Made by a program: the position numbers and the translations under genes. DNA of 64,000 nucleotides from Chrysemys picta bellii. Taxonomy: Eukaryota. The stretch covers positions 23,374,001 to 23,438,000 of the forward strand of contig NC_088804.1 of NCBI RefSeq assembly GCF_011386835.1, given 5' to 3'. The notes beneath the pieces are model-generated. The model searched no databases. It saw only the letters and a program-made list of their open reading frames with translations, and was not told where the DNA came from. Of this stretch, positions 3,067 to 64,000 are shown in pieces. Each line of letters begins with the position of its first letter. The first letter of the stretch is position 1.

Positions 3067-3452
3067 GGCCTGGTCTACACTATGACTTTAATTCGGATTT
3101 AGCAGCGTTAAATCGAATTAACCCTGCACCCGTCCACACAATGAAGCCATTTATTTCGAAATAAAGGTCTCTTTAAATTGATTTCTGTACTCCACCCCGA
3201 CAAGCGGAGTAGCACCAAAATCGATATTGTCATTTCGAATTAGGGTTAGCGTGGCCGCAATTCGATGATATTGGCCTCCTGGAGCTGTCCCACAGTGCAC
3301 CATTGTGACCGCTCTGGACAGCAATCTGAACTCGGATGCACTGGCCAGGTAGACAGGAAAAGCCCCGCGAACATTTGAATTTCATTTCCTGTTTGCCCAG
3401 CGTGGAGAGCACAGGTGACCACAGATAGCTGAGCTCATCAGCACAGGTAACC

Positions 3453-3990
3453 ATGCAGGCCGATAATCGAAAAAGAGCACCAGCATGGACCGTACGGGAG
3501 GTACTGGATCTGATCGCTATATGGGGAGAGGATTCAGTGCTAGCAGAACTTCGTTCGAAAAGACGAAATGCCAAAACTTTTGAAAAAATCTCCAAGGGCA
3601 TGATGGAGAGAGGCCATAATAGGGACTCAGATCAGGGCCGCGTGAAAGTCAAGGAGTTCAGACAAGCCTATCAAAAAACAAAGGAGGCAAATTCTCGCTC
3701 CGGGTCAGAGCCGCGGACATTCTGCTTCTACGCCGAGCTGCATGCAATTCTAGGGGGGGCCGCCACCACTACCCCACCTCTGACCGTGGATTCCGAGGTG
3801 GGGATAATCTCATCAGCTACACCTGAGGATTCTGCGGACGGGGAAGAGGAGGAGGAGGACGAGCTTGCGGAGAGCACCCAGCACTCCGTTCTCCCCAACA
3901 GCCAGGATCTTTTTCTCAGCCTGACTGAAGTACCCTCCCAACCCTCCCAAGCCAATATCCAAGACCATGACCCCATGGAAGGGACCTCAG
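3453..3990 (+). CDS. Harbinger Myb/SANT-like (trihelix-type) DNA-binding protein, exon 1 (copy 1)
   Basis: MQADNRKRAPAWTVREVLDLIAIWGE...FEKISKGM...YQKTKEAN...FYAELHAILG fits the Myb/SANT-like pattern of the NAIF1/MSANTD type; acidic tract follows; strong donor CAG|GTGAGT at 3990/3991, phase 1. Confidence 0.9.
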
Positions 3991-4090
3991 GTGAGTTTAC
4001 CTTTTAAAATATAAAACTTGCTTTTAAAACAAGCGTTTTTTAATGATTACTTTGCCCTGAGGACTTGGGATGCATTCACGGCCAGTACAG

Positions 4091-4952
4091 CTACTGGAAA
4101 AGTCTGTTAATGTGTCTGGGGATGGAGCGGAAATCCTCCAGGGACATCTCATGAAGCTCTCCTGGAGTACTCCAAAAGCCTTGCTTCAAGGTTTCTGGTC
4201 AGTGCAGCCTTATTCCGTCCTCCATGGTAGGACACTTGACCACGCCATGCTTGCAGCAAGTAATCTGGTATCATTGCATTACAAAGTCTGGCAGCGTATG
4301 GTCCCGGTGTTTGCTGGCATTCAAGCAACATTCGTTCTTTATCTCGCTGTGTAATCCTCAGGAAAGTGATATCGCTCATGGTAACCTGGTTGAAATACGG
4401 GAATTTAATTAAGGGGACAGAGGTGGCCATTCCTACTGGGCTGTTTGCCTGTGGCTGAAAAGAAATCCTTCCCTGCAGTTAGCCAAGCGCGGGGGGGGGG
4501 GGGGGGGCGGGGGGAATTGGCCCTGAGCTTTTCGCGTTTGGCTAGCAGAGATCTTCCCTGTTACCAGCCACGCGGTGGGGGGAGGGGTACAGCGATCATC
4601 CCAGATAATTCATGGCGGGAGGGGGTGGGGTGGGGGGGTTAGTTTGGTTTCTGCAGGGATCTTCCCTGATACCAGCCACGCGGTGGGGGGAGGGGTACAG
4701 CGATCATCCCAGATAATTCATGGCGGGAGGGGGCGGGGAGGGGGGGTTAGTTTGGTTTCTGCCGGGATCTTCCCTGATACCAGCCACGCGGTGGGGGGAG
4801 GGATAAAGCGATCATCCCAGAGAATTGGATGTGGGGGGGCGTTAGTTTGTTTTCTGCTGCTGAAGGTTAACAGGAAAACCGCAGCAGTCAACGGGCTTTG
4901 CTTGGTATGTAGGAAAGGAGGGCGCAGAAGCCGAAAGACAATGGCTTACCAT
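4091..4952 (-). pseudogene. Nested third Harbinger gene (BEN-domain-like), copy 1, frameshifted; join(4952-4950,4448-4091)
   Basis: Homologous to the intact ORF in copy 2; donor, branch point and acceptor conserved; exon 2 is 358 nt versus 360 nt because of two 1-nt deletions near 4150-4170. Confidence 0.7.
4550..4860. repeat. G-rich tandem repeat, about 3 x 108 bp, inside Harbinger copy 1
   Basis: gatcttccctg..taccagccacgcggtggggggagggg recurs at 4550, 4658 and 4766. Confidence 0.9.
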
Positions 4953-5176
4953 GGCCGCATGCAAGCTGAATTCTGTTGCCCGGACCTGCATCTGTGATCT
5001 CTAACACCAAAACCACAGGCACTCAATATTAAGATGGAAAATGCGACCTTGTACTGAAATCACATGTGCTATGTAATGTGAATAGTGTTGTTCACTATGA
5101 AAGAGTATAAGCATTGTTCTGTAAAATGTATCATTTAAAAAACTCCTCTCCTTTTTTTCAACCCTCCCTCCAGCAG

Positions 5177-5637
5177 CTGCAAATTTTTCAGGCCTCCCTC
5201 CTCCATCCCGAAGGCTATCTCAGATAAGGCGGCGGAGGAAGAGGACGCGAGATGAGATGTTCACGGAAATAATGGAATGCACCCGCAATGAAAGAGCTCA
5301 TTTGAATGAGTGGAAGGACACGGTATCTAAATTTAGGAAAGATGCCAGTGAACGTGAGGTCATGAGGGATGCTCAAGATGAGAGGTGGCAGGCTGCAATG
5401 CTGGGGCTGCTGCGTGAGCAAACAGACATGCTCCGGCATCTGGTGGAGCTTCAGGAACGGCAGCAGGATAACATACTGCCGCTGCAGCCGCTGTATAACC
5501 TCCCTCCCCCATCACCATGTTCCATATCCTCCTCACCCAGACGTGTAAGAACACCGGGGGGGGGGGGGGAGAGGCTCTGTGCATCCTCCCACTCCACCCC
5601 AGTGGACAGCCCAACCAAAAGGCTGTCATTATATTGA
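5177..5637 (+). CDS. Harbinger Myb/SANT protein, exon 2 (copy 1); join(3453-3990,5177-5637) = 332 aa
   Basis: Pyrimidine tract plus CAGCAG acceptor (5171-5176); phase matches exon 1; basic NLS-like RRRRKRTRD, coiled-coil-like segment, Pro-rich tail; no stops; AATAAA at 5731. Confidence 0.85.
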
Positions 5638-5730
5638 ATTTTTTCACTGGCCTTTTACTTCCCTCCTATCCTCCTCCCAAACCTCACCCAGATTACCTTG
5701 TCGGTTCTCTCCCTATGTTTATAATCAATT

Positions 5731-5770
5731 AATAAAGAATACATGATTTTTAAATGATAGTGACTTTATT
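5731..5770. terminator. Convergent polyadenylation signals (Myb gene +, transposase -), copy 1
   Basis: AATAAA at 5731-5736 (+) and TTTATT at 5765-5770 (AATAAA on -), between the two stop codons. Confidence 0.6.
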
Positions 5771-5871
5771 TCCTTTGAAAGCAAGCTGGGGGAAGGGGGA
5801 GGGTGGGTTCCTTACAGAGAATGAGTCAATAAAGGGGGCGGGTTTTCATGAAGGAAAAACAAACAGAAATT

Positions 5872-7161
5872 TCACACTGTAACCTGGCCAGTCATGAAAC
5901 TGGTTTTCAAAGCTTCTCTGATGCACGGAGCTTCCTGGTGTGCTCTTCTAATCGCCCTGGTGTCTGGCTGCGCGTAATCAGCAGCCAGGCGATTTGCCTC
6001 AGCCTCCCACCCCGCCATAAAGGTCTCCCCCTTACTTTCACAGAGATTGTGGAGCACACAGCAAGCAGAAATAACAATGGGGATATTGGTTTGGCTGAGG
6101 TCTGAGCGAGTCAATAACGATCACCAGCGACCTTTTAAACGGCCAAATGCACATTCTACCACCATTCTGCACTTGCTCAGCCTGTAGTTGAACATCTCTT
6201 GACTCCTGTCCAGGCTGCCTGTGTATGGCTTCATGAGCCATGACATTAAGGGGTAGGCTGGGTCCCCAAGAATAACTATTGGCATTTCAACATCCCCAAC
6301 GGTCATTTTCTGGTCCGGGAAGTAAGTCCCTTGCTGCAGCCGTTTAAACAGATTAGTGTTCCTGAAGACGCGAGCATCATGAACCCTTCCCGACCAGCCC
6401 ATGTTGATGTTGGTGAAACGTCCCTTGTGATCCACAAGTGCTTGCAGCACCATTGAAAAGTACCCCTTGCGGTTTATGTACTGGGTACCCTGGTGCTTCG
6501 GTGCCAAGATAGGGATATGGGTTCCATCTATCGCCCCACCACAGTTAGGGAATCCCATTGCAGCAAAGCCATCCACTATGACCTGCACGTTTCCCAGAGT
6601 CACTACCTTTCGTAGCAGCACCTCAGTGATTGCTTTGGCTACTTGCATCACAGCAGCCCCCACAGTAGATTTGCCCACTCCAAATTGATTCCCGACTGAC
6701 CGGTAGCTGTCGGGCGTTGCAAGCTTTCACAGGGCTATCGCCACTCGCTTCTCAACTGTGAGGGCTGCTCTCATCTTGGTATTCTGGCGCTTCAGGGCAG
6801 AGGAAAGCAAGTCACAAAGTTCCATGAAAGTGCCCTTATGCATGAGAAAGTTTTGCAGCCACTGGGAATCATCCCGCACCTGCAACACTATGTGGTCCCA
6901 CCAATCTGTGCTTGTTTCCCGGGCCCAGAATCGGCGTTCCACGGCTATAACCTGCCCCATTAACAGCATGATCTCCAAAGCACCGGGTCCCACGGTTTGA
7001 TAGAATTCCATGCCCATATCCTCATCAATCTCGCTGCCGTGCTGCTGTAGCCTACTCCTCGCAGCCTGGTTTTGCATGTTGTGGTTCAGCATAAACTGCA
7101 CAATAACGCGCGAGGTGTTTACAATGTTCATGACTGCTGTCTTGAGCTGAGCAGGCTCCAT
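5872..7161 (-). pseudogene. Harbinger DDE transposase (HARBI1-like), copy 1, two nonsense codons
   Basis: Three ORF pieces in one frame; TGA at 6729-6727 (TGG in copy 2) and 6123-6121 (Arg codon in copy 2); motifs GAIDGTHIPI, GDPAYPL and VVECAFGRLKGRW present. Confidence 0.95.
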
Positions 7162-7529
7162 GCTTGCCGTGGTATGGCATCTGCACTATTCACCCAGGAA
7201 AAAGGCGTGAAATGGTTGTCTGCCATTGCTTCCCTGGAGAGAGGGGAGGATATACCCAGAACCACCCGGGACAATGTTTTTGGCCCCATCAGGCATTGGG
7301 ATCTCAACCCAGAATTCCAATGGGTGGAGGAGACTGCGGGAACTATGGGATAGCTATGGGATAGCTCCCCACAGTGCAGTGCTCCAGAAATCGACGCTAG
7401 CCCCGGTACATGGACGCACACCACCAAATTAATGTGCTTTGTGTGGCCGCATACATTCGACTTTATACAATCTGTTTTCAAAATTCGAATAATATAAATT
7501 CGGATTAATCCCGTAGTGTGGACATACCC

Positions 7530-7589
7530 TTTGAATAAATAATGTAGGACATTTTTATAGATGGGGGAAATCTGTTCTGAGAAGCAGTG
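7530..7589 (+). mobile_element. CR1 LINE, segment 2 of 3
   Basis: gaataaataatgtagg...atggggga...gaagcagtg continues the RT sequence broken at 3066. Confidence 0.75.
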
Positions 7590-9992: not shown

Positions 9993-12053
9993 TAACTTAG
10001 TAGTGTCCCTTTAAAATCTGCTAAAGGATGAAATTTGTCTCTCCTTGGTGTGATTTCCTGACCCCTTTGCACTAAAATTATTTGATTATATATAAACATA
10101 AAACTATAAAAAGTAAAACTAAATTTACACTAATTTAACTCCTAATTGACTTCAGTGGTTGCTGCTGTATGCTTAGCACTTTTGAAAATTGGAGCATGCA
10201 TTTAGGAGCGTACCTTTAGGCGCTCATTTTCCAATATCAGGTATGTTTTCTTCTGTCTCTCAAAAATTATTGAGCCATATTTTCAGGCCATTAATGCGCA
10301 CAAGAGCATGTGCAAAATGTGCAGGCAATTGCTTGTTTAATTTTCATAACAGTGTATGCCGATTATAGAATTGCACACACAGATATGCCATATTTATATG
10401 ATGTGGGTTTTGCACTTTAGAAAAAGTAATGGTGATTTAATTTAAATGCATGTTTTTTCTCCATGAAATTCCTTATTTTAAATATTTGAAAGTATGTGTA
10501 TATTTTTAAAATCAAATAGACTTGCTCTTAAGCATGTCATTAGCATTAATTTATGATGCTCTGCTCAATGAGCCACAAACTCAAAATATTTCAACAAAGG
10601 AGAGAAAAAAACAATCTTTGTCTCATGCTATAGTAGTTCAAAAGAACAATTTCAGGACTACCAGGGAAAATGAAGATCAATAATCAGATGGGGCCATTAC
10701 CCTGTAGTAGATGGTGCAAAGTGTAAACTCTCTCATTAATAAGGCAGATTTTTTTTAATTTTTGCTGATGATTTTTTTTTCTTCCCTGGCACATATGGTA
10801 CTTAAGATTTCATACAAACCCCTGTTAAAAAAAAAAAAAAAAGGTGAGTCAAAAACCGAGTATTGACTAGATACAGGTATGTAGTCTTAACTGTGAATTT
10901 CTTTGCTTTGGTAGTGTAGGTCAAAGTCAAATTCTTAGTGTTAACTAAACATAGAATATGTTTTGTGTTTTTCCTGCAATTGATTTTTAACATGTTCTAA
11001 ACTTGACTGCTATAAAATTAATAATTGTCTTGAGGGTTTTTTAAAAATTTCCATTTGTGCCTTTGATTCAGCAAAAGCCATTGTTTGGCATTTTATTCTT
11101 GGGTAGTGACTTTGATCTGTGTTTGGCTCAAACACAGATACCCTGCACCAAAACATTTCAGTTCCAACAAATCATAACTGGTTTGGAAATGAATAGATTT
11201 GGAAGGTCAGTTGTCAGAGGTCAAGTTTGCAATTACATTGCAATTTTAAGGTGCAATTGCTTTAGGCGTTACCGGACTCCAAAAAGAACTATGCAGTAAC
11301 TACAGGTTTGAAAAACTCATCCATAGGATCTTGACCTACAGGTGGAAAGGGATAACTGCAATGCAACTGAGAAGTCTGCAGATTGAGAGAATTATGTTGA
11401 CACTATTAGTTTTAGACATTTGGCATTTAATCCTAATCATTAGACAAAAGAAGCTTTAATACAAGCAAATTACTAAAAACACTGTGAATGACATTTCTGA
11501 ACCATGTGTGTATTGTCCCCTGCTCTTCCTTGCCTCCTTCAATATAACAAACATCTTTCCTCTAGCCCTGGAAGGAAAACAAGTGTCTTTGCAATTGGTG
11601 CAAGTGCCATTCCTTGGCTGGCTCACAGCAGGATACCCTCTCCTCAGGGTAGTGGAGTCCCTTCACCCACAGTAACAGATTTCCGTGACTAGAAATGAAC
11701 AACATATGTGAACTCTGCTGGCCAAGTGAATGGGGACAGTATAGCATATCTCATTCTAAACTCCTGGGTTTCCAACCAAACCACGGAGGAATACATTTTA
11801 AGAGAGATTAACAGATTCCATAAAACAATCTCAGCACAAAGACAAATCAAATTGTTTCTAAAAGTCTGTATTTTACTGCAGCATGGGAGTAGACTCTCTT
11901 TGCATGAAAATGGTATCTTGTTGAATGCTTGGGGGGGTCAAGGAAGAGGAAGCCAGCAAACAAACTTGCTAACTCACCCTATGTTCACTACCTCCCTGCA
12001 CTCTCTCCTTGTTCATAGTGCCCTTAGAGTTAGTTAGTTAGAGGAATTGTTAC

Positions 12054-60704: not shown

Positions 60705-62006
60705 ATGGAGCCCGCTGAGGTCAAGACAGCACTCATGAATATTGCAAACACCTCGCGCGTTCTCGTGGAGTTTATGCTCAGCCAGGACCAGAAAAACGAG
60801 GAGAGGAGGCAGCGGCGGCGGCAGCGCAGCGACAAGCATGATGAGGACATGGACACGGACACGGACACAGAATTCAGTGAAACCACAGGCCCCGGTGCTT
60901 TGGAGATCATGTTGTTAATGGGGCAGATTCTATCCATGGAACGCCGATTCTGGGCAAGGGAAACAAGCACAGACTGGTGGGACCGCATAGTGTTGCAGGT
61001 CTGGGACGATTCCCAGTGGCTGCGGAACTTTCGCATGCGTAAGGGCACTTTCATGGAACTTTGTGACTTGCTGTCCCCTGCCCTGAAACGCCAGAATACC
61101 AAGATGAGAGCAGCCCTCACAGTTGAGAAGCGCGTGGCGATAGCCCTGTGGAAGCTTGCAACGCCAGACAGCTACCGGTCAGTCGGGAATCAATTTGGAG
61201 TGGGCAAATCTACTGTGGGGGCTGCTGTGATGCAAGTAGCCAAAGCAATCACTCAGGTGCTGCTACGAAAGTTAGTGACTCTGGGAAATGTGCAGGCGAT
61301 AGTGGATGGTTTTGCTGCAATGGGATTCCCTAACTGTGGTGGGGCAATAGATGGAACCCATATCCCTATCTTGGCACCGGAGCACCAAGCCACCGAGTAC
61401 ATAAACCGCAAGGGGTACTTTTCAATGGTGCTGCAAGCACTTGTGGATCACAAGGGACGTTTCACCAACATCAACGCGGGCTGGGCGGGAAGGGTTCATG
61501 ACGCTCGCGTCTTCAGGAACACTACTCTGTTTAAAGGGCTGCAGCAAGGGACTTACTTTCCGGACCAGAAAATAACCGTTGGGGATGTTGAAATGCCCAT
61601 AGTTATTCTTGGGGACCCAGCCTACCCCTTAATGCCATGGCTTATGAAGCCATACACAGGCAGCCTGGACAGGAGTCAGGAGCTGTTTAACTACAGGCTA
61701 AGCAAGTGCAGAATGGTGGTAGAATGTGCATTTGGCCGTTTAAAAGGTCGCTGGCGTTCATTATTGACTCGCTCTGACCTCAGCCAAAGAAATCTCCCCA
61801 TTGTTATTTCTGCTTGCTGTGTGCTCCACAATCTCTGTGAAAGTAAGGGGGAGACCTTTATGGCGGGGTGGGAGGCTGAGGCAAATCGCCTGGCTGCTGA
61901 TTACGCACAGCCAGACACCAGGGCGATTAGAAGATCACACCATGAAGCGCTGTGCATCAGAGAAGCTTTGAAAACCAGTTTCATGGCTGGCCAGGCTACC
62001 GTGTGA
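60705..62006 (+). CDS. Harbinger DDE transposase (HARBI1-like), uninterrupted, 433 aa
   Basis: MEPAEVK start is homologous to copy 1's MEPAQLK; HTH region FRMRKGTFMELC..YRSVGNQFGVGKSTV; catalytic D216 (IDGTH), D304 (GDPAY) and E340 (VVECAF). Confidence 0.93.
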   Translation: MEPAEVKTALMNIANTSRVLVEFMLSQDQKNEERRQRRRQRSDKHDEDMDTDTDTEFSETTGPGALEIMLLMGQILSMERRFWARETSTDWWDRIVLQVWDDSQWLRNFRMRKGTFMELCDLLSPALKRQNTKMRAALTVEKRVAIALWKLATPDSYRSVGNQFGVGKSTVGAAVMQVAKAITQVLLRKLVTLGNVQAIVDGFAAMGFPNCGGAIDGTHIPILAPEHQATEYINRKGYFSMVLQALVDHKGRFTNINAGWAGRVHDARVFRNTTLFKGLQQGTYFPDQKITVGDVEMPIVILGDPAYPLMPWLMKPYTGSLDRSQELFNYRLSKCRMVVECAFGRLKGRWRSLLTRSDLSQRNLPIVISACCVLHNLCESKGETFMAGWEAEANRLAADYAQPDTRAIRRSHHEALCIREALKTSFMAGQATV

Positions 62007-62107
62007 AATATCTGTTTGTTTCTCCTTCATGAAAACCCTCCCCCTTTACTGACTGATTTTCTGTAAGGAACCCACCCTGCCCCTTCCCCCAGCTTTCTTT
62101 CAAACCA

Positions 62108-62147
62108 AATAAAGTCACTATCATTTAAAAATCATTTATTCTTTATT
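62108..62147. terminator. Convergent polyadenylation signals, copy 2
   Basis: AATAAA at 62108-62113 (+); TTTATT at 62135-62140 and 62142-62147 (AATAAA on -). Confidence 0.6.
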
Positions 62148-62229
62148 AATAGATTAGAAAAAGAGGGAGGGAACCCGGGTGGTATTTGGGAGGAGGATTG
62201 CTGGGAAGGAAAAAGCCACAAAGAAAAGG

Positions 62230-62720
62230 TTAAAAAAATGACAGCCTTTTGCTTGGGCTGTCTACTGGGGTGGAATGGGAAGGTGTACGGAGCCTCCCCC
62301 CCCGCGTTCTTACACGTCTGGGTGAGGAGGATACGGAACATGGGGAGGGGGGAGGGTGGAACAGGGGCTGAAGCGGCAGTCTGTTTTCCAGCAGCCGTTC
62401 CTGAACCTCCACCAGACGCCGGAGCAGCCCCAGCGTTGCATCCTTCATCCTCTGGTCTTCCTGCCGCCATCTCTCATCTCGATCGTCTCTCCTCTCCTCA
62501 CGTTGGTCCCTCCTCTCCTCACGTTGGTCCCTCCTGTCCTCACGATCACTGACTTCTTTCCTATACTTTGAAACTGTTTCCTTCCACTCATTCAGATGAG
62601 CTCTGTCACTCCTGCTGGATTGCATAATTTCAGAAAACATGTCCTCCCGCGTCTTCTTCTTACGACGCCTTATCTGTGATAACCTTCGGGATGGAGGAGG
62701 GAGGCTTGAGGAATTTGCAG
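62230..62720 (-). CDS. Harbinger Myb/SANT protein, exon 2 (copy 2); exon 1 is outside the window
   Basis: Acceptor ttttcccctccctaCAGCAG; open frame ..RRLSQIRRRKKKTREDMFSEIMQ..SKRLSFF*, homologous to copy 1 exon 2. Confidence 0.85.
62489..62545. repeat. 21-bp in-frame tandem repeat (RRDQREE) in Myb exon 2
   Basis: ctcctctcctcacgttggtcc at 62489 and 62510, with a partial third unit at 62531. Confidence 0.9.
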
Positions 62721-62934
62721 CTGCTGTAGGGAGGGGAAAAAAGAGAGAATTGTTTTAAAAGCTACATTTTGCAGAACAATGCTTATACTCTTTCACGGTG
62801 ACCAACACTGTTCACATTACATAGCACATGTGATTTCTGTGCAAGGTCGCATTTTGCCTCTTAATGCTGAGTGCCTGTGGCTTTGCTGCTAGAGATCACA
62901 GGTCTGGGCAACAGAATTCGGCTTGCATGCGGCC

Positions 62935-63899
62935 ATGGTAAGCCATTGTTTTACAGCTTCTGCACCCTCCTTTCCCACATACCAAGCATAGCTTGTAGAG
63001 TGCTGCAGAAGCCTGGCCAATCTCAGCCAGTTTGGGGGGGGGGCAGTGTGGTGGGGCTTGTCTGGGCCCCTTCAGGCAAGTAGAGTGCTGCGGTTTTTCT
63101 GTTAACATTCAGCAGCACCAGAAAACAAACTAACCCCCCCCCCCCCCGCCATGAATTCTCTGGGATGATCACGGTACCCCCCCCCCCCCCACCGCGTGGC
63201 TGGTATCAGGGAAGATCCCTGCAGGCACCAAACTACCCCCCCCCCCCCGCCGCTGACCCCCCCCCCCCTCGCCATGAATTCTCTGGGATGATCACGGTAC
63301 CCTCCCCCCACCGCGTGGCTGGTAACAGGGAAGATCCCTGCAGGCACCAAACTACCCCCCCCCCCCCGCCACCGACCCCCCCCCCCTCGCCATGAATTCT
63401 CTGGGATGATCACGGTACCCTCCCCCCACCGCGTGGCTGGTAACAGGGAAGATCCCTGCTAGCCAAACGCGAAAAACTCAGGGCCAATTTCCCATCTGCG
63501 CTTGGCTAACTGCAGGGAAGGATTTATTTTCCGCCACAGGCAAACAGCCCAGTAGGAACGGCCACCTCTGTCCCCTTAATTAAGTTCCCGTATTTCAACC
63601 AGGTTACCAGGAGTGATATCACTCTCCTGAGGATTACACAACAAGATAAAGAACGGATGTTGCTTGAATGCCAGCAAACACCGGGACCATACGCTGCCAG
63701 GCTTTGTCAGGCAATGATACCAGATTACTTGCTGCAAGCATGGCGTGGTCAAGTGTCCTACCATGGAGGAGGGAATAAGGATGCACTGCCCAGAAACCTT
63801 CTGGCAAGGCTTTCGGAGTACCTCCAGGAGAGCTTCATGGAGATGTCCCTGGAGGATTTCCGCTCCATCCCCATACACGTTAACAGACTTTTCCAGTAG
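62935..63899 (+). CDS. Nested third Harbinger gene, 120-aa BEN-domain-like protein; join(62935-62937,63540-63899)
   Basis: gcggccATG|GTAAGC donor; CTAAC branch point at 63506-63510; atttattttccgccaCAG acceptor at 63539; phase 0 join gives MANSPVG...NRLFQ*; ATTAAA at 63957. All signals are conserved in copy 1. Confidence 0.7.
63110..63460. repeat. C-rich (G-rich on minus) tandem repeat, about 3 x 118 bp, inside Harbinger copy 2
   Basis: cagggaagatc recurs at 63207, 63326 and 63444. Confidence 0.9.
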
Positions 63900-64000
63900 C
63901 TACAGACTTTTCCAGTACCTGAACTGACCGCGAATGCAAAGTCAGACAAAGTAATCATTAAAAACCGTTTGCTTTTAAAACAAGTTTTATATTTTAAAAG

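What the first reader, a model, noticed from the sequence alone, without database searches (positions are those of the whole stretch)
62935..63962. Hidden third gene in a turtle Harbinger: spliced BEN-domain-like ORF nested antisense in the Myb-gene intron
SEEN: on the transposase strand, inside the Myb gene's intron, there is a complete gene model. It runs gcggccATG (62935-37), GTAAGC donor, 602-nt intron, CTAAC branch point (63506), pyrimidine tract and CAG acceptor (63539), 360-nt exon ending TAG (63899), then ATTAAA (63957). Splicing creates the Kozak context gccATGG and gives MANSPVGTATSVPLIKFPYFNQVTRSDITLLRITQQDKERMLLECQQTPGPYAARLCQAMIPDYLLQAWRGQVSYHGGGNKDALPRNLLARLSEYLQESFMEMSLEDFRSIPIHVNRLFQ (120 aa). 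Every signal recurs in the divergent copy 1. The ATG sits alone at the end of the upstream exon, so ORF finders see only an 80-aa fragment. KNOWN: the standard PIF/Harbinger model has two proteins, a DDE transposase and a Myb/SANT partner (domesticated as HARBI1 and NAIF1). BEN domains (BANP, BEND proteins, Insensitive) are helical DNA/chromatin-binding repressor or insulator modules. INFERENCE: the C-terminal ~75 aa follow the BEN pattern by eye (YAxRLxxxM.P..L, then G..K.AL, then L..YL...F, then F..I...VN), though the basic tail of the last helix looks short. This would make a three-gene Harbinger carrying its own chromatin regulator or anti-silencing factor. I know of no description of this, but I cannot search the literature.
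Basis: partly seen in the sequence, partly recalled or inferred. Interest (0 to 1): 0.92.

Follow-up and report, generated by a model that had tools for sequence, protein, structure and literature searches.

The report
Third, BEN-fold gene in turtle Harbinger
Turtle Harbinger transposons, long described as two-gene elements, carry a conserved third small gene hidden inside an intron of their Myb gene; it encodes a BEN-fold protein whose nearest named relative is the frog germ-plasm protein Xpat.

Summary
The gene is real by comparative evidence. The same layout, transposase (+), Myb exon 2 (-), small ORF (+), Myb exon 1 (-), recurs in turtle Harbinger subfamilies whose transposases are only 57-70% identical. 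The ORF co-diverges with the other two genes (42-54% aa), with pN below pS in 28 of 28 pairs.

The oddest feature is a start codon standing alone at the end of exon 1 (ATG|GTRAGT). It recurs in frame in three further subfamilies, 117-131 nt upstream of a 'ttttccacag' acceptor.

With a 28-sequence alignment AlphaFold gives pLDDT 94.7. All top PDB matches are BEN domains (Z 12.0 to BEND3 BEN4; unrelated chains 2.9 or less). The best Swiss-Prot match is Xenopus Protein Pat (TM 0.91).

Caveats:
- Pfam BEN is not reached.
- Copy 1 has two frameshifts.
- Three RNA-seq runs show the Myb intron spliced (189 and 110 reads) but list no 62937>63540 junction.
- Function is inferred. The domain is near neutral and ends before the base-reading segment of BEND3, so a protein-binding accessory role is likelier than DNA binding.

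Four unchecked notes of this scan make the same call elsewhere in this genome.

The parts
60311..64000 (+). Harbinger copy 2. Its left end lies near 60311 and it runs off the window end; Myb exon 1 and the right end lie beyond 64000.
   Evidence: Self-BLAST to copy 1; sequence.
60552..62006 (+). Intact DDE transposase ORF (484 aa; the probable start is the ATG at 60705).
   Evidence: ORF list; Pfam DDE_Tnp_4 E 6.9e-36.
62230..62723 (-). Myb-like gene, exon 2 (C-terminal, charged coiled-coil-like part), with acceptor ctacag|CAGCTGC.
   Evidence: ORF. RNA reads leave the window at 62726 and continue into the Myb exon 1 sequence (189 and 110 reads).
62724..64000 (-). Myb-gene intron, which continues to the window end. 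It contains the whole third gene on the opposite strand.
   Evidence: Spliced reads at 62726. Copy 1 shows the donor CAG|GTGAGT just beyond the equivalent of 64000.
62935..62937 (+). Start codon of the third gene, the last three bases of its exon 1. The TSS is unmapped; about 208 nt separate it from the Myb exon 2 boundary.
   Evidence: The in-frame upstream stretch has a stop 14 codons back and no ATG. Homologous ATG|GTGAGT occurs in L001, L005 and L007.
62938..63539 (+). Intron of the third gene (602 nt): donor GTAAGC, branch CTAAC 63506-63510, acceptor ttttccgccacag.
   Evidence: Homologous introns are 131, 117 and 117 nt in L001, L005 and L007. No junction read is listed.
63133..63459 (.). 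C-rich 118-bp tandem repeat (2.7 copies) that inflates the intron in this subfamily.
   Evidence: TRF; self-BLAST.
63540..63899 (+). Terminal coding exon (119 codons plus TAG). Residues from 63603 on form the BEN-fold domain.
   Evidence: AF2 pLDDT 94.7. BEN matches. RNA depth is about 75-107 over 63648-63895 against 6-18 over 63400-63523.
63600..63603 (+). Second in-frame acceptor (caaccag|GTTACC). Public turtle gene models use it to join host or transposase exons to this exon.
   Evidence: P0001-P0007 and P0070 all begin the shared part at (Q)VT(M)SDITLL.
63609..63611 (+). AGG here, ATG in copy 1 and in about 60% of RNA reads (63610 G>T). This is an internal Met of this subfamily only.
63957..63962 (+). 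ATTAAA polyadenylation signal of the third gene, about 40 nt before the Myb donor on the other strand.
   Evidence: conserved in copy 1. AATAAA lies at the same relative place in L001.
4091..4448 (-). Copy 1: homologous terminal exon, frameshifted by two 1-nt deletions. ATG|GTAAGC lies at 4952-4945 and ATTAAA at 4044-4039.
3453..3992 (+). Copy 1: Myb-like gene exon 1 (Myb/SANT-like domain), on the strand opposite to that copy's transposase.
   Evidence: Pfam Myb_DNA-bind_4 E 5.3e-16; sequence.

Best explanation
Turtle Harbinger elements carry a genuine third protein-coding gene.

Structure and position. The gene lies wholly inside the intron of the Myb-like gene, on the transposase strand. It has two exons. 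Exon 1 contributes only the ATG. The terminal exon encodes about 100-120 aa that fold as a single BEN domain and end at a conserved stop, followed by the gene's own poly(A) signal.

Shown:
- the sequence signals;
- conserved synteny, reading frame and split start codon across deeply diverged subfamilies;
- purifying selection;
- a confident BEN fold.

Inferred function. The protein is an accessory or regulatory subunit that works through protein contacts, like BEND3 BD1, rather than as a sequence-reading DNA binder. Its partner could be the element's own Myb/transposase complex or a host BEN or chromatin factor. The reasons are that the turtle versions are near neutral in charge and stop just before the segment that reads bases in BEND3 BD4.

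Side effect. The strong acceptor plus poly(A) signal also lets copies sitting in host introns act as alternative last exons of host genes.
For: - Signals at the stated coordinates.
- Same gene order in L001, L005, L007 and L008. Transposase is 57-70% aa identical to the window copy, the ORF 42-54% and Myb exon 1 45-64%, while non-coding DNA is no longer alignable.
- pN is below pS in 28 of 28 pairs, with dN/dS 0.15-0.5 where not saturated. This is comparable to Myb exon 1.
- ATG|GTRAGT plus a 'ttttccacag' acceptor recurs in frame in L001, L005 and L007, and is the only or nearly only ATGGTRAG in those loci. L008 keeps the donor with CTG.
- The stop position is conserved at the domain's end.
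- AF2 gives pLDDT 94.7 and pTM 0.86 with 28 sequences.
- The 12 best PDB entries are all BEN domains, Z 12.0 down to 6.9, and the next chain scores 2.9. AFDB clusters are 'BEN domain-containing' at probability 1.0. ESM features point to BEN clusters at 0.94.
- Turtle sequences form one clade, support 96/97.
- Net charge is -5 to +3. The model ends at BEND3 residue 807-810, before the base contacts R810/R814/K815 (PMC8887127).
- NCBI isoforms of PFKFB4, CDK6, RAB3C and TEDC1 end in this exon.
Against: - In three RNA-seq runs where the Myb intron junction has 189 and 110 reads, no 62937>63540 or 62937>63603 joint is among the 15 listed, some of which have only 3 reads. Twenty joints were not shown and the tissues are unknown.
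- The higher read depth on the exon could partly reflect mappability.
- Pfam BEN is not reached by any turtle sequence.
- Copy 1 versus copy 2 looks nearly neutral in this exon: 6 synonymous changes, 14 non-synonymous changes and 2 frameshifts.
- The sequences came from protein databases, which favour open frames.
- An out-of-frame ATG lies 8 nt upstream of the start.
- Function is untested, and the complex prediction gave no answer.
Confidence: 0.72

Rival explanations
1. The exon is an alternative 3' exon of the transposase transcript. A donor inside the transposase ORF (..WWDRIVLQ|, CAG|GTCTGG near 61000) is spliced to 63603, giving a truncated transposase N-terminus fused to the BEN domain. 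This would be a regulator in the style of the P-element repressor. It could coexist with the stand-alone gene.
For: NCBI models P0003 and P0070 (Malaclemys LOC128825970 X1/X2) have exactly this junction. The BGI models P0004 and P0018 also put transposase N-terminal sequence before the domain. Both units lie on the same strand.
Against: The donors differ between models (after ..IVLQ, after ..DIMV, after ..DNDID), as expected from gene-finder joins. P0004 also fuses Myb sequence from the opposite strand. No 61000>63603 joint is listed in RNA. It does not explain the conserved ATG|GTRAGT mini-exon.
Confidence: 0.1
2. The ORF is translated without splicing from an ATG inside the exon (63609-63611 in the subfamily consensus), from a promoter just upstream. 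This would give a protein of about 96 aa.
For: Copy 1 and about 60% of RNA reads have ATG at 63609-63611. The context is A at -3. Read depth rises near 63555-63650, and a few molecules begin at 63469 and 63555.
Against: No equivalent in-exon ATG exists in L001, L004, L005 or L007; the 'M' of the Logan ORFs there is a GTG or TTG read under the bacterial code. In those subfamilies the exon opens directly at an acceptor.
Confidence: 0.08
3. The exon is a captured piece of a host gene (the last exon of an Xpat-like BEN gene). It serves no purpose for the element and persists as a passenger or merely as a splice-acceptor/poly(A) trap.
For: Squamates have a conserved, host-like gene ending in the same domain with the same exon boundary. 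Xenopus Pat shares the fold at TM 0.91. Many host isoforms end in the exon.
Against: A passenger would not stay open and co-diverge with transposase and Myb over divergence that erased all non-coding similarity. Nor would it keep pN below pS in all pairs and its own start codon, donor and stop.
Confidence: 0.07
4. There is no gene: a chance open frame with chance splice-like signals.
For: ATGGTRAG is not enriched in the window. No Pfam hit. No junction reads listed.
Against: 56 database relatives; a confident fold that emerges only from the family alignment (versus 36); recurrence of every signal in other subfamilies.
Confidence: 0.02

Closest known systems
BEND3 BEN domains (BD4, PDB 7w27/7v9i; BD3, 7v9h; BD1 with PICH)
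   Same: Same fold: Z 12.0 and 11.9, rmsd 2.1-2.3 A over 87-90 residues. BD1 shows that a BEN scaffold can serve protein binding instead of DNA reading (PMC8887127).
   Different: 15-18% identity. This is a single-domain protein of about 100-120 aa. It ends at about residue 807-810 of BD4, so it lacks the alpha5-loop-alpha6 base-reading residues. It is near neutral rather than basic. It is encoded by a transposon.
Xenopus laevis Protein Pat (Xpat/pgat, O73622)
   Same: Best named structural match: TM 0.91, rmsd 1.3 A over 97 residues, 27% identity, E 3.3e-7, to the C-terminal residues 186-281. In both, the domain sits at the very C-terminus.
   Different: Xpat is a 293-aa host protein of germ-plasm particles (PMC3827131) with a long N-terminal region. 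It is not known to be transposon-borne. Sequence-level homology was not tested here because its sequence could not be fetched.
Canonical PIF/Harbinger (Harbinger3_DR; domesticated HARBI1 and NAIF1/MSANTD)
   Same: DDE_Tnp_4 transposase plus a Myb/SANT-like partner in the usual tail-to-tail layout.
   Different: The literature in the held library describes two ORFs (PMC9392472, PMC2836001). Here a third conserved gene is nested antisense in the Myb intron.
Drosophila BEN-solo factors (Insensitive, Elba1/2)
   Same: Small proteins whose only recognisable domain is one C-terminal BEN domain (PMC4281564). Insv BEN matches at Z 7.1.
   Different: Those are basic, sequence-specific DNA-binding repressors or insulators encoded by host genes. 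The turtle protein is shorter and near neutral.
Exon-trapping domestication such as SETMAR (from general knowledge)
   Same: Host exons are spliced onto a transposon-borne coding exon that brings its own acceptor and poly(A) site (PFKFB4, CDK6, RAB3C and TEDC1 isoforms).
   Different: These are predicted isoforms of unknown function. The trapped exon is an accessory gene, not the transposase.

Membership tests
BEN domain (Pfam PF10523) | Match to the Pfam BEN model at or above its gathering score (23.2 bits) | tested here: not met
   No hit for the window protein even at E<=10. One of 56 relatives (fish P0033) reaches E 4.7e-4. Fish P0059 scores 13.7 bits.
BEN domain (Pfam PF10523) | The BEN fold, compared with solved BEN structures | tested here: met
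   AF2 pLDDT 94.7. The 12 top PDB entries are all BEN (Z 12.0 to 6.9) and the next chain scores 2.9. Foldseek's top 11 are all BEN, but with weak E-values of 0.05-1. AFDB clusters agree.
BEN domain (Pfam PF10523) | Basic C-terminal segment or long alpha5 that contacts DNA bases | tested here: not met
   The alignment to BEND3 BD4 ends at residues 807-810 and the protein then stops. Base contacts in BD4 are E807, R810, R814 and K815 (PMC8887127). Net charge is -5 to +3.
BEN domain (Pfam PF10523) | DNA or chromatin binding | not testable with these tools
   Needs EMSA, SELEX or ChIP.
PIF/Harbinger transposon | DDE_Tnp_4 (PIF-type) transposase | tested here: met
   PF13359 E 6.9e-36, PF04827 E 5.4e-11.
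PIF/Harbinger transposon | Second gene with a Myb/SANT-like DNA-binding domain | tested here: met
   Copy 1 exon 1: PF13837 E 5.3e-16. The intron is spliced in RNA. For copy 2, exon 1 lies outside the window.
PIF/Harbinger transposon | Terminal inverted repeats and a 3-bp TWA target duplication | tested here: inconclusive
   By eye the ends read GGGTATGTCTACACTA (copy 2 left) and GGCCTGGTCTACACTA (copy 1 right, reverse complement), with TTA beside the copy 1 end. Not tested formally, and the copy 2 right end is outside the window.
Xpat/pgat-like proteins | Homology of the C-terminal domain | tested here: met
   Structure only: TM 0.91, rmsd 1.3 A, 27% identity, E 3.3e-7. No sequence-profile test was possible.
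Xpat/pgat-like proteins | Germ-plasm expression or localisation | not testable with these tools
   Tissue of the RNA runs is unknown.
Expressed spliced protein-coding gene | Purifying selection on the reading frame | tested here: met
   The within-subfamily pair copy 1 versus copy 2 is uninformative.
Expressed spliced protein-coding gene | Reads across the proposed exon junction | tested here: inconclusive
   None among the 15 joints listed, while the Myb junction has 189 and 110 reads. Twenty joints and 879 loose ends were not shown, and only one call was allowed.

The most novel reading that the evidence does not exclude
The Harbinger BEN gene, the frog germ-plasm gene Xpat/pgat and the conserved squamate genes ending in the same domain could be one family linked by transposon-host exchange. 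One route is that host exons trapped the element's ready-made terminal exon and produced a germ-plasm protein. The other is that the element acquired a germ-plasm or chromatin-targeting module and uses it to confine or promote its activity in the germ line. This would give Xpat, so far described without relatives, an origin and a testable biochemical role.
Probability: 0.15. Interest if true: 0.9.

Novelty: new variant of a known kind. Interest (0 to 1): 0.74.

Why it matters
PIF/Harbinger is the textbook two-protein DNA transposon, and its two genes have been domesticated repeatedly (HARBI1, NAIF1/MSANTD, plant ALP and HDP).

- A third gene kept under selection in a vertebrate lineage means the model is incomplete there. 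It gives a concrete candidate for how an element regulates itself or deals with host chromatin.
- The gene is invisible to ORF finders because its start codon is split from the body by an intron. The same trick may hide genes in other elements.
- The exon's acceptor and poly(A) site make it a natural gene trap that already appears in predicted isoforms of turtle PFKFB4, CDK6, RAB3C and TEDC1.
- The structural link to Xenopus Xpat opens a route to the origin and function of a germ-plasm protein.

I found no description of any of this in the held literature. I could not check Repbase entries.

Tried and rejected
- Pfam on the 119-aa exon product: no BEN hit.
- Profile search of PDB sequences with the 28-sequence alignment: only chance hits with E of 0.6 or more.
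- AF2 with the 4-sequence alignment: pLDDT 56, unusable.
- Complex prediction with transposase, Myb exon 1, Myb exon 2 and BEN as partner: no answer, score 0.00. This is evidence neither for nor against binding.
- The look-up of encoding contigs for P0003: not on record.
- Fish locus L003: no Harbinger transposase or Myb within 8 kb, so the fish relatives are not shown to be Harbinger-borne.
- Alignment of the roughly 250 nt upstream of the ATG across subfamilies: no clear shared promoter motif.
- Copy 1 versus copy 2 dN/dS: too few changes to be informative.
- Two protein searches aimed at reaching Xpat by sequence found only fish and squamate relatives.
- Literature searches for Harbinger plus BEN, a third ORF or turtle: nothing relevant.
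- The transposase-BEN fusion reading and the internal-ATG reading were weighed and ranked below the split-ATG model (see rivals).

Full report
**1. The observation**

The window holds two Harbinger copies. Copy 2 starts near 60311 and runs off the window end. Copy 1 lies on the minus strand at about 3068-7530 and is about 84% identical.

- ATG at 62935-62937, followed directly by GTAAGC;
- a 602-nt interval;
- CTAAC at 63506-63510;
- a pyrimidine tract and CAG ending at 63539;
- 360 nt of open frame to the TAG at 63897-63899;
- ATTAAA at 63957-63962.

The frame is open over 63510-63899. A mechanical ORF list shows only the 80-aa piece that begins at the first internal ATG.

The Myb-like gene is on the other strand, and its intron is real. 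RNA reads match up to 62726 and then continue with the sequence that ends Myb exon 1 in copy 1 (189 and 110 reads in two runs). The small ORF therefore does lie inside the Myb intron, antisense to it and in the same direction as the transposase.

Copy 1 keeps the ATG|GTAAGC, branch site, acceptor, stop and ATTAAA. It has two single-base deletions in the exon, so it is frameshifted.

**2. Is it a gene?**

A profile of the domain finds 56 proteins at E of 1e-3 or better among 1.8 billion representatives. They come from turtles (Chelonia, Chrysemys, Malaclemys, Mauremys, Trachemys, Caretta), geckos, a fish and unnamed assemblies.

I fetched the DNA for several diverged turtle members. In L001 and L005 (Chelonia), L008 (Mauremys) and L007 the order is the same:
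- transposase on the plus strand;
- Myb exon 2 on the minus strand;
- the small ORF on the plus strand;
- Myb exon 1 on the minus strand.

| Locus | Transposase, aa identity to window copy | Small ORF | Myb exon 1 |
|---|---|---|---|
| L001 | 57% | 42% | 45% |
| L005 | 58% | 45% | 46% |
| L008 | 70% | 54% | 64% |

Outside the transposase core the DNA of L001 no longer aligns with the window copy.

Codon comparisons give pN below pS in all 28 pairs, with dN/dS of 0.15-0.5 where synonymous sites are not saturated. These values are close to those of Myb exon 1 against the same loci.

The stop codon falls at the same place, right after the last helix, in all turtle subfamilies and in squamates. 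The turtle sequences form one clade apart from squamate and fish sequences (support 96/97). This points to one origin in the turtle Harbinger lineage followed by co-divergence.

The copy 1 versus copy 2 comparison alone is nearly neutral (6 synonymous and 14 non-synonymous changes plus two frameshifts). That is expected for decay after insertion.

**3. The gene model**

| Locus | Start codon and donor | Intron | Acceptor and first codons |
|---|---|---|---|
| L001 | ATG|GTGAGT at 6001 | 131 nt | ttttccacag|GAG TTG GTC (BGI protein P0017 begins MELVLEDISLL) |
| L005 | ATG|GTGAGT at 11433 | 117 nt | ttttccacag|ACG GTG |
| L007 | ATG|GTGAGT at 435 | 117 nt | ttttccacag|GTA GGG |
| L008 | CTG|GTAAGCC, start codon changed | not measured | donor retained at the same place |

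All three ATG models are in frame. ATGGTRAG is the only match on either strand in all of L001 and L005. The background rate is about 5 per 64 kb on both strands, so three further hits at the homologous spot are far beyond chance.

The window copy's acceptor at 63539 (ttttccgccacag) is the counterpart of that conserved acceptor. Its intron is five times longer because of a 118-bp C-rich tandem repeat at 63133-63459.

This subfamily also has a second in-frame acceptor at 63602/63603. Every public gene model of this subfamily begins the shared sequence there.

Upstream of the ATG the frame has a stop 14 codons back and no in-frame ATG, but an out-of-frame ATG lies 8 nt before it.

**4. RNA**

I laid three raw RNA-seq runs and one RNA contig set on 60300-64000 at 90% likeness.
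- The element family is expressed. Depth is about 90-250 over the transposase core (60920-62035).
- Depth is 130-340 over Myb exon 2.
- Depth over 63648-63895 is 73-107 in the two paired runs, against 6-18 over 63400-63523 and 10-16 over 63028-63151.
- No joint 62937>63540, 62937>63603 or 61000>63603 is among the 15 joints listed, although joints with three reads are listed.

The test is not clean, however. Twenty joints and 879 loose ends were withheld, the tissues are unknown, only one call was allowed, and part of the depth contrast may come from indels that hinder mapping.

Indirect support that the acceptor and poly(A) site work comes from NCBI isoforms that end in this exon:
- PFKFB4 in Trachemys and Chrysemys;
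- CDK6 in Malaclemys;
- RAB3C and TEDC1 in Chrysemys;
- a GlyT1-like model in Mauremys.

I could not inspect their read support.

**5. What the protein is**

Pfam gives nothing for the turtle protein. A 4-sequence alignment folds poorly (pLDDT 56). With 28 family members AlphaFold gives pLDDT 94.7 and pTM 0.86: five helices with a short hairpin.

- Foldseek's top 11 PDB hits are all BEN domains, though with weak E-values.
- Structural re-alignment gives the scores below.

| Structure | Z |
|---|---|
| BEND3 BEN4 | 12.0 and 11.9 |
| BEND3 BEN3 | 10.6 |
| BANP | 9.0 |
| BEND6 | 7.5 |
| Insensitive | 7.1 |
| NACC1 | 6.9 |
| Best unrelated chain | 2.9 |

- AlphaFold DB clusters give dozens of 'BEN domain-containing' proteins at probability 1.0.
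- Language-model features point to BEN clusters at 0.94.
- Fish relatives are named BEN by UniRef and touch Pfam BEN below threshold.

The fold call is therefore sound, but membership by the Pfam model is not met.

The best named match is the C-terminal domain of Xenopus Protein Pat (TM 0.91, rmsd 1.3 A, 27% identity, E 3.3e-7). Pat is a protein of germ-plasm particles (PMC3827131).

Squamates have a gene of 200-300 aa ending in the same domain. It is 80-94% identical between gecko and snake. Its last exon opens at an acceptor five codons before the 'DI' motif, as in the turtle elements. That gene looks like a host gene.

**6. How it most likely works**

This section is inference. BEND3 BD4 reads bases with E807, R810, R814 and K815 in a basic alpha5-loop-alpha6 segment. 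BD1 of the same protein lacks these residues and binds the protein PICH instead (PMC8887127).

The turtle protein aligns to BD4 only up to residue 807-810 and then stops. Its net charge is -5 to +3 in all turtle subfamilies, against +16 or +17 in squamates and +6 in fish.

I therefore favour a protein-contact role: a small BEN-only subunit that joins or modulates the Myb/transposase complex, or that engages (perhaps blocks) a host BEN or chromatin factor. DNA binding at the element's ends or promoters remains possible.

Roughly: protein adaptor or decoy 45%, DNA-binding regulator 30%, other 25%. A four-chain complex prediction gave no answer.

**7. Known or new**

In the held library Harbingers are described as two-ORF elements (PMC9392472, PMC2836001, PMC9179366). 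Searches for Harbinger with BEN, a third ORF or turtle found nothing relevant. I could not consult Repbase.

Four earlier first-reader notes of this scan make the same call on other pieces of this genome, none followed up. Another note flags the intact transposase of this copy.

**Verdict.** This is a new variant of a known kind of element. Two caveats remain open: direct transcript evidence and function.

Noticed in passing
P0036, P0071-P0074, P0005, P0006, P0007, P0010 (public proteins): Predicted host isoforms end in the Harbinger BEN exon: PFKFB4 in both Trachemys and Chrysemys, plus CDK6, RAB3C, TEDC1 and a GlyT1-like model. Intronic copies seem to act as alternative last exons that truncate host proteins.
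   Followed up: partly
P0025, P0075, P0076; L002:226-532: Squamates (Gekko, Sphaerodactylus, Pseudonaja) have a 200-300 aa gene ending in the same domain. It is 80-94% identical across gecko and snake and strongly basic (pI about 11.5), so it looks like a host gene, possibly an Xpat counterpart. Gekko japonicus P0057 fuses it to KDM4B-like in a prediction.
   Followed up: partly
L003:8001-9014; P0033, P0059-P0068: Larimichthys crocea has a multi-copy family (16 sequences in one 90% cluster, plus fusions to an L1-type endonuclease and to DLG1). Its members have a coiled-coil N-terminus and this BEN-like domain. There is no Harbinger gene within 8 kb, and a Tc1-like transposase lies next door. 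This is possibly another mobile carrier of the domain.
   Followed up: partly
window 63900-63921: Copy 2 has a private duplication of about 20 bp just after the stop codon (the motif 'cagacttttccagta' occurs twice). RNA reads of the family diverge here (78-96 loose ends at 63901).
   Followed up: partly
window 61125-61571: RNA reads and one RNA contig skip 445 nt inside the transposase ORF, with ends AG..AA, which is not an intron. The likely cause is transcribed internally deleted, non-autonomous copies.
   Followed up: no
window 60311-64000 versus 4001-7530: Identity between the two copies is uneven: 93-97% in the transposase core and 92-95% in the BEN exon, but 67-87% in Myb exon 2 and 72-88% in the transposase N-terminus. 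The copies seem to descend from different master lineages rather than differing only by decay.
   Followed up: partly
window 60552-62006: The transposase ORF of copy 2 is intact (484 aa), as are Myb exon 2 and the BEN gene. This copy could be recent or still competent. Its right end and Myb exon 1 lie outside the window.
   Followed up: partly
rows 2-4 (M7BJY4, A0A6P8QK44, A0A5J5CAQ2): More distant vertebrate proteins share the domain at TM 0.89-0.94 and 19-27% identity. One is a second Chelonia protein, and two are long proteins of 643 and 1167 aa.
   Followed up: no
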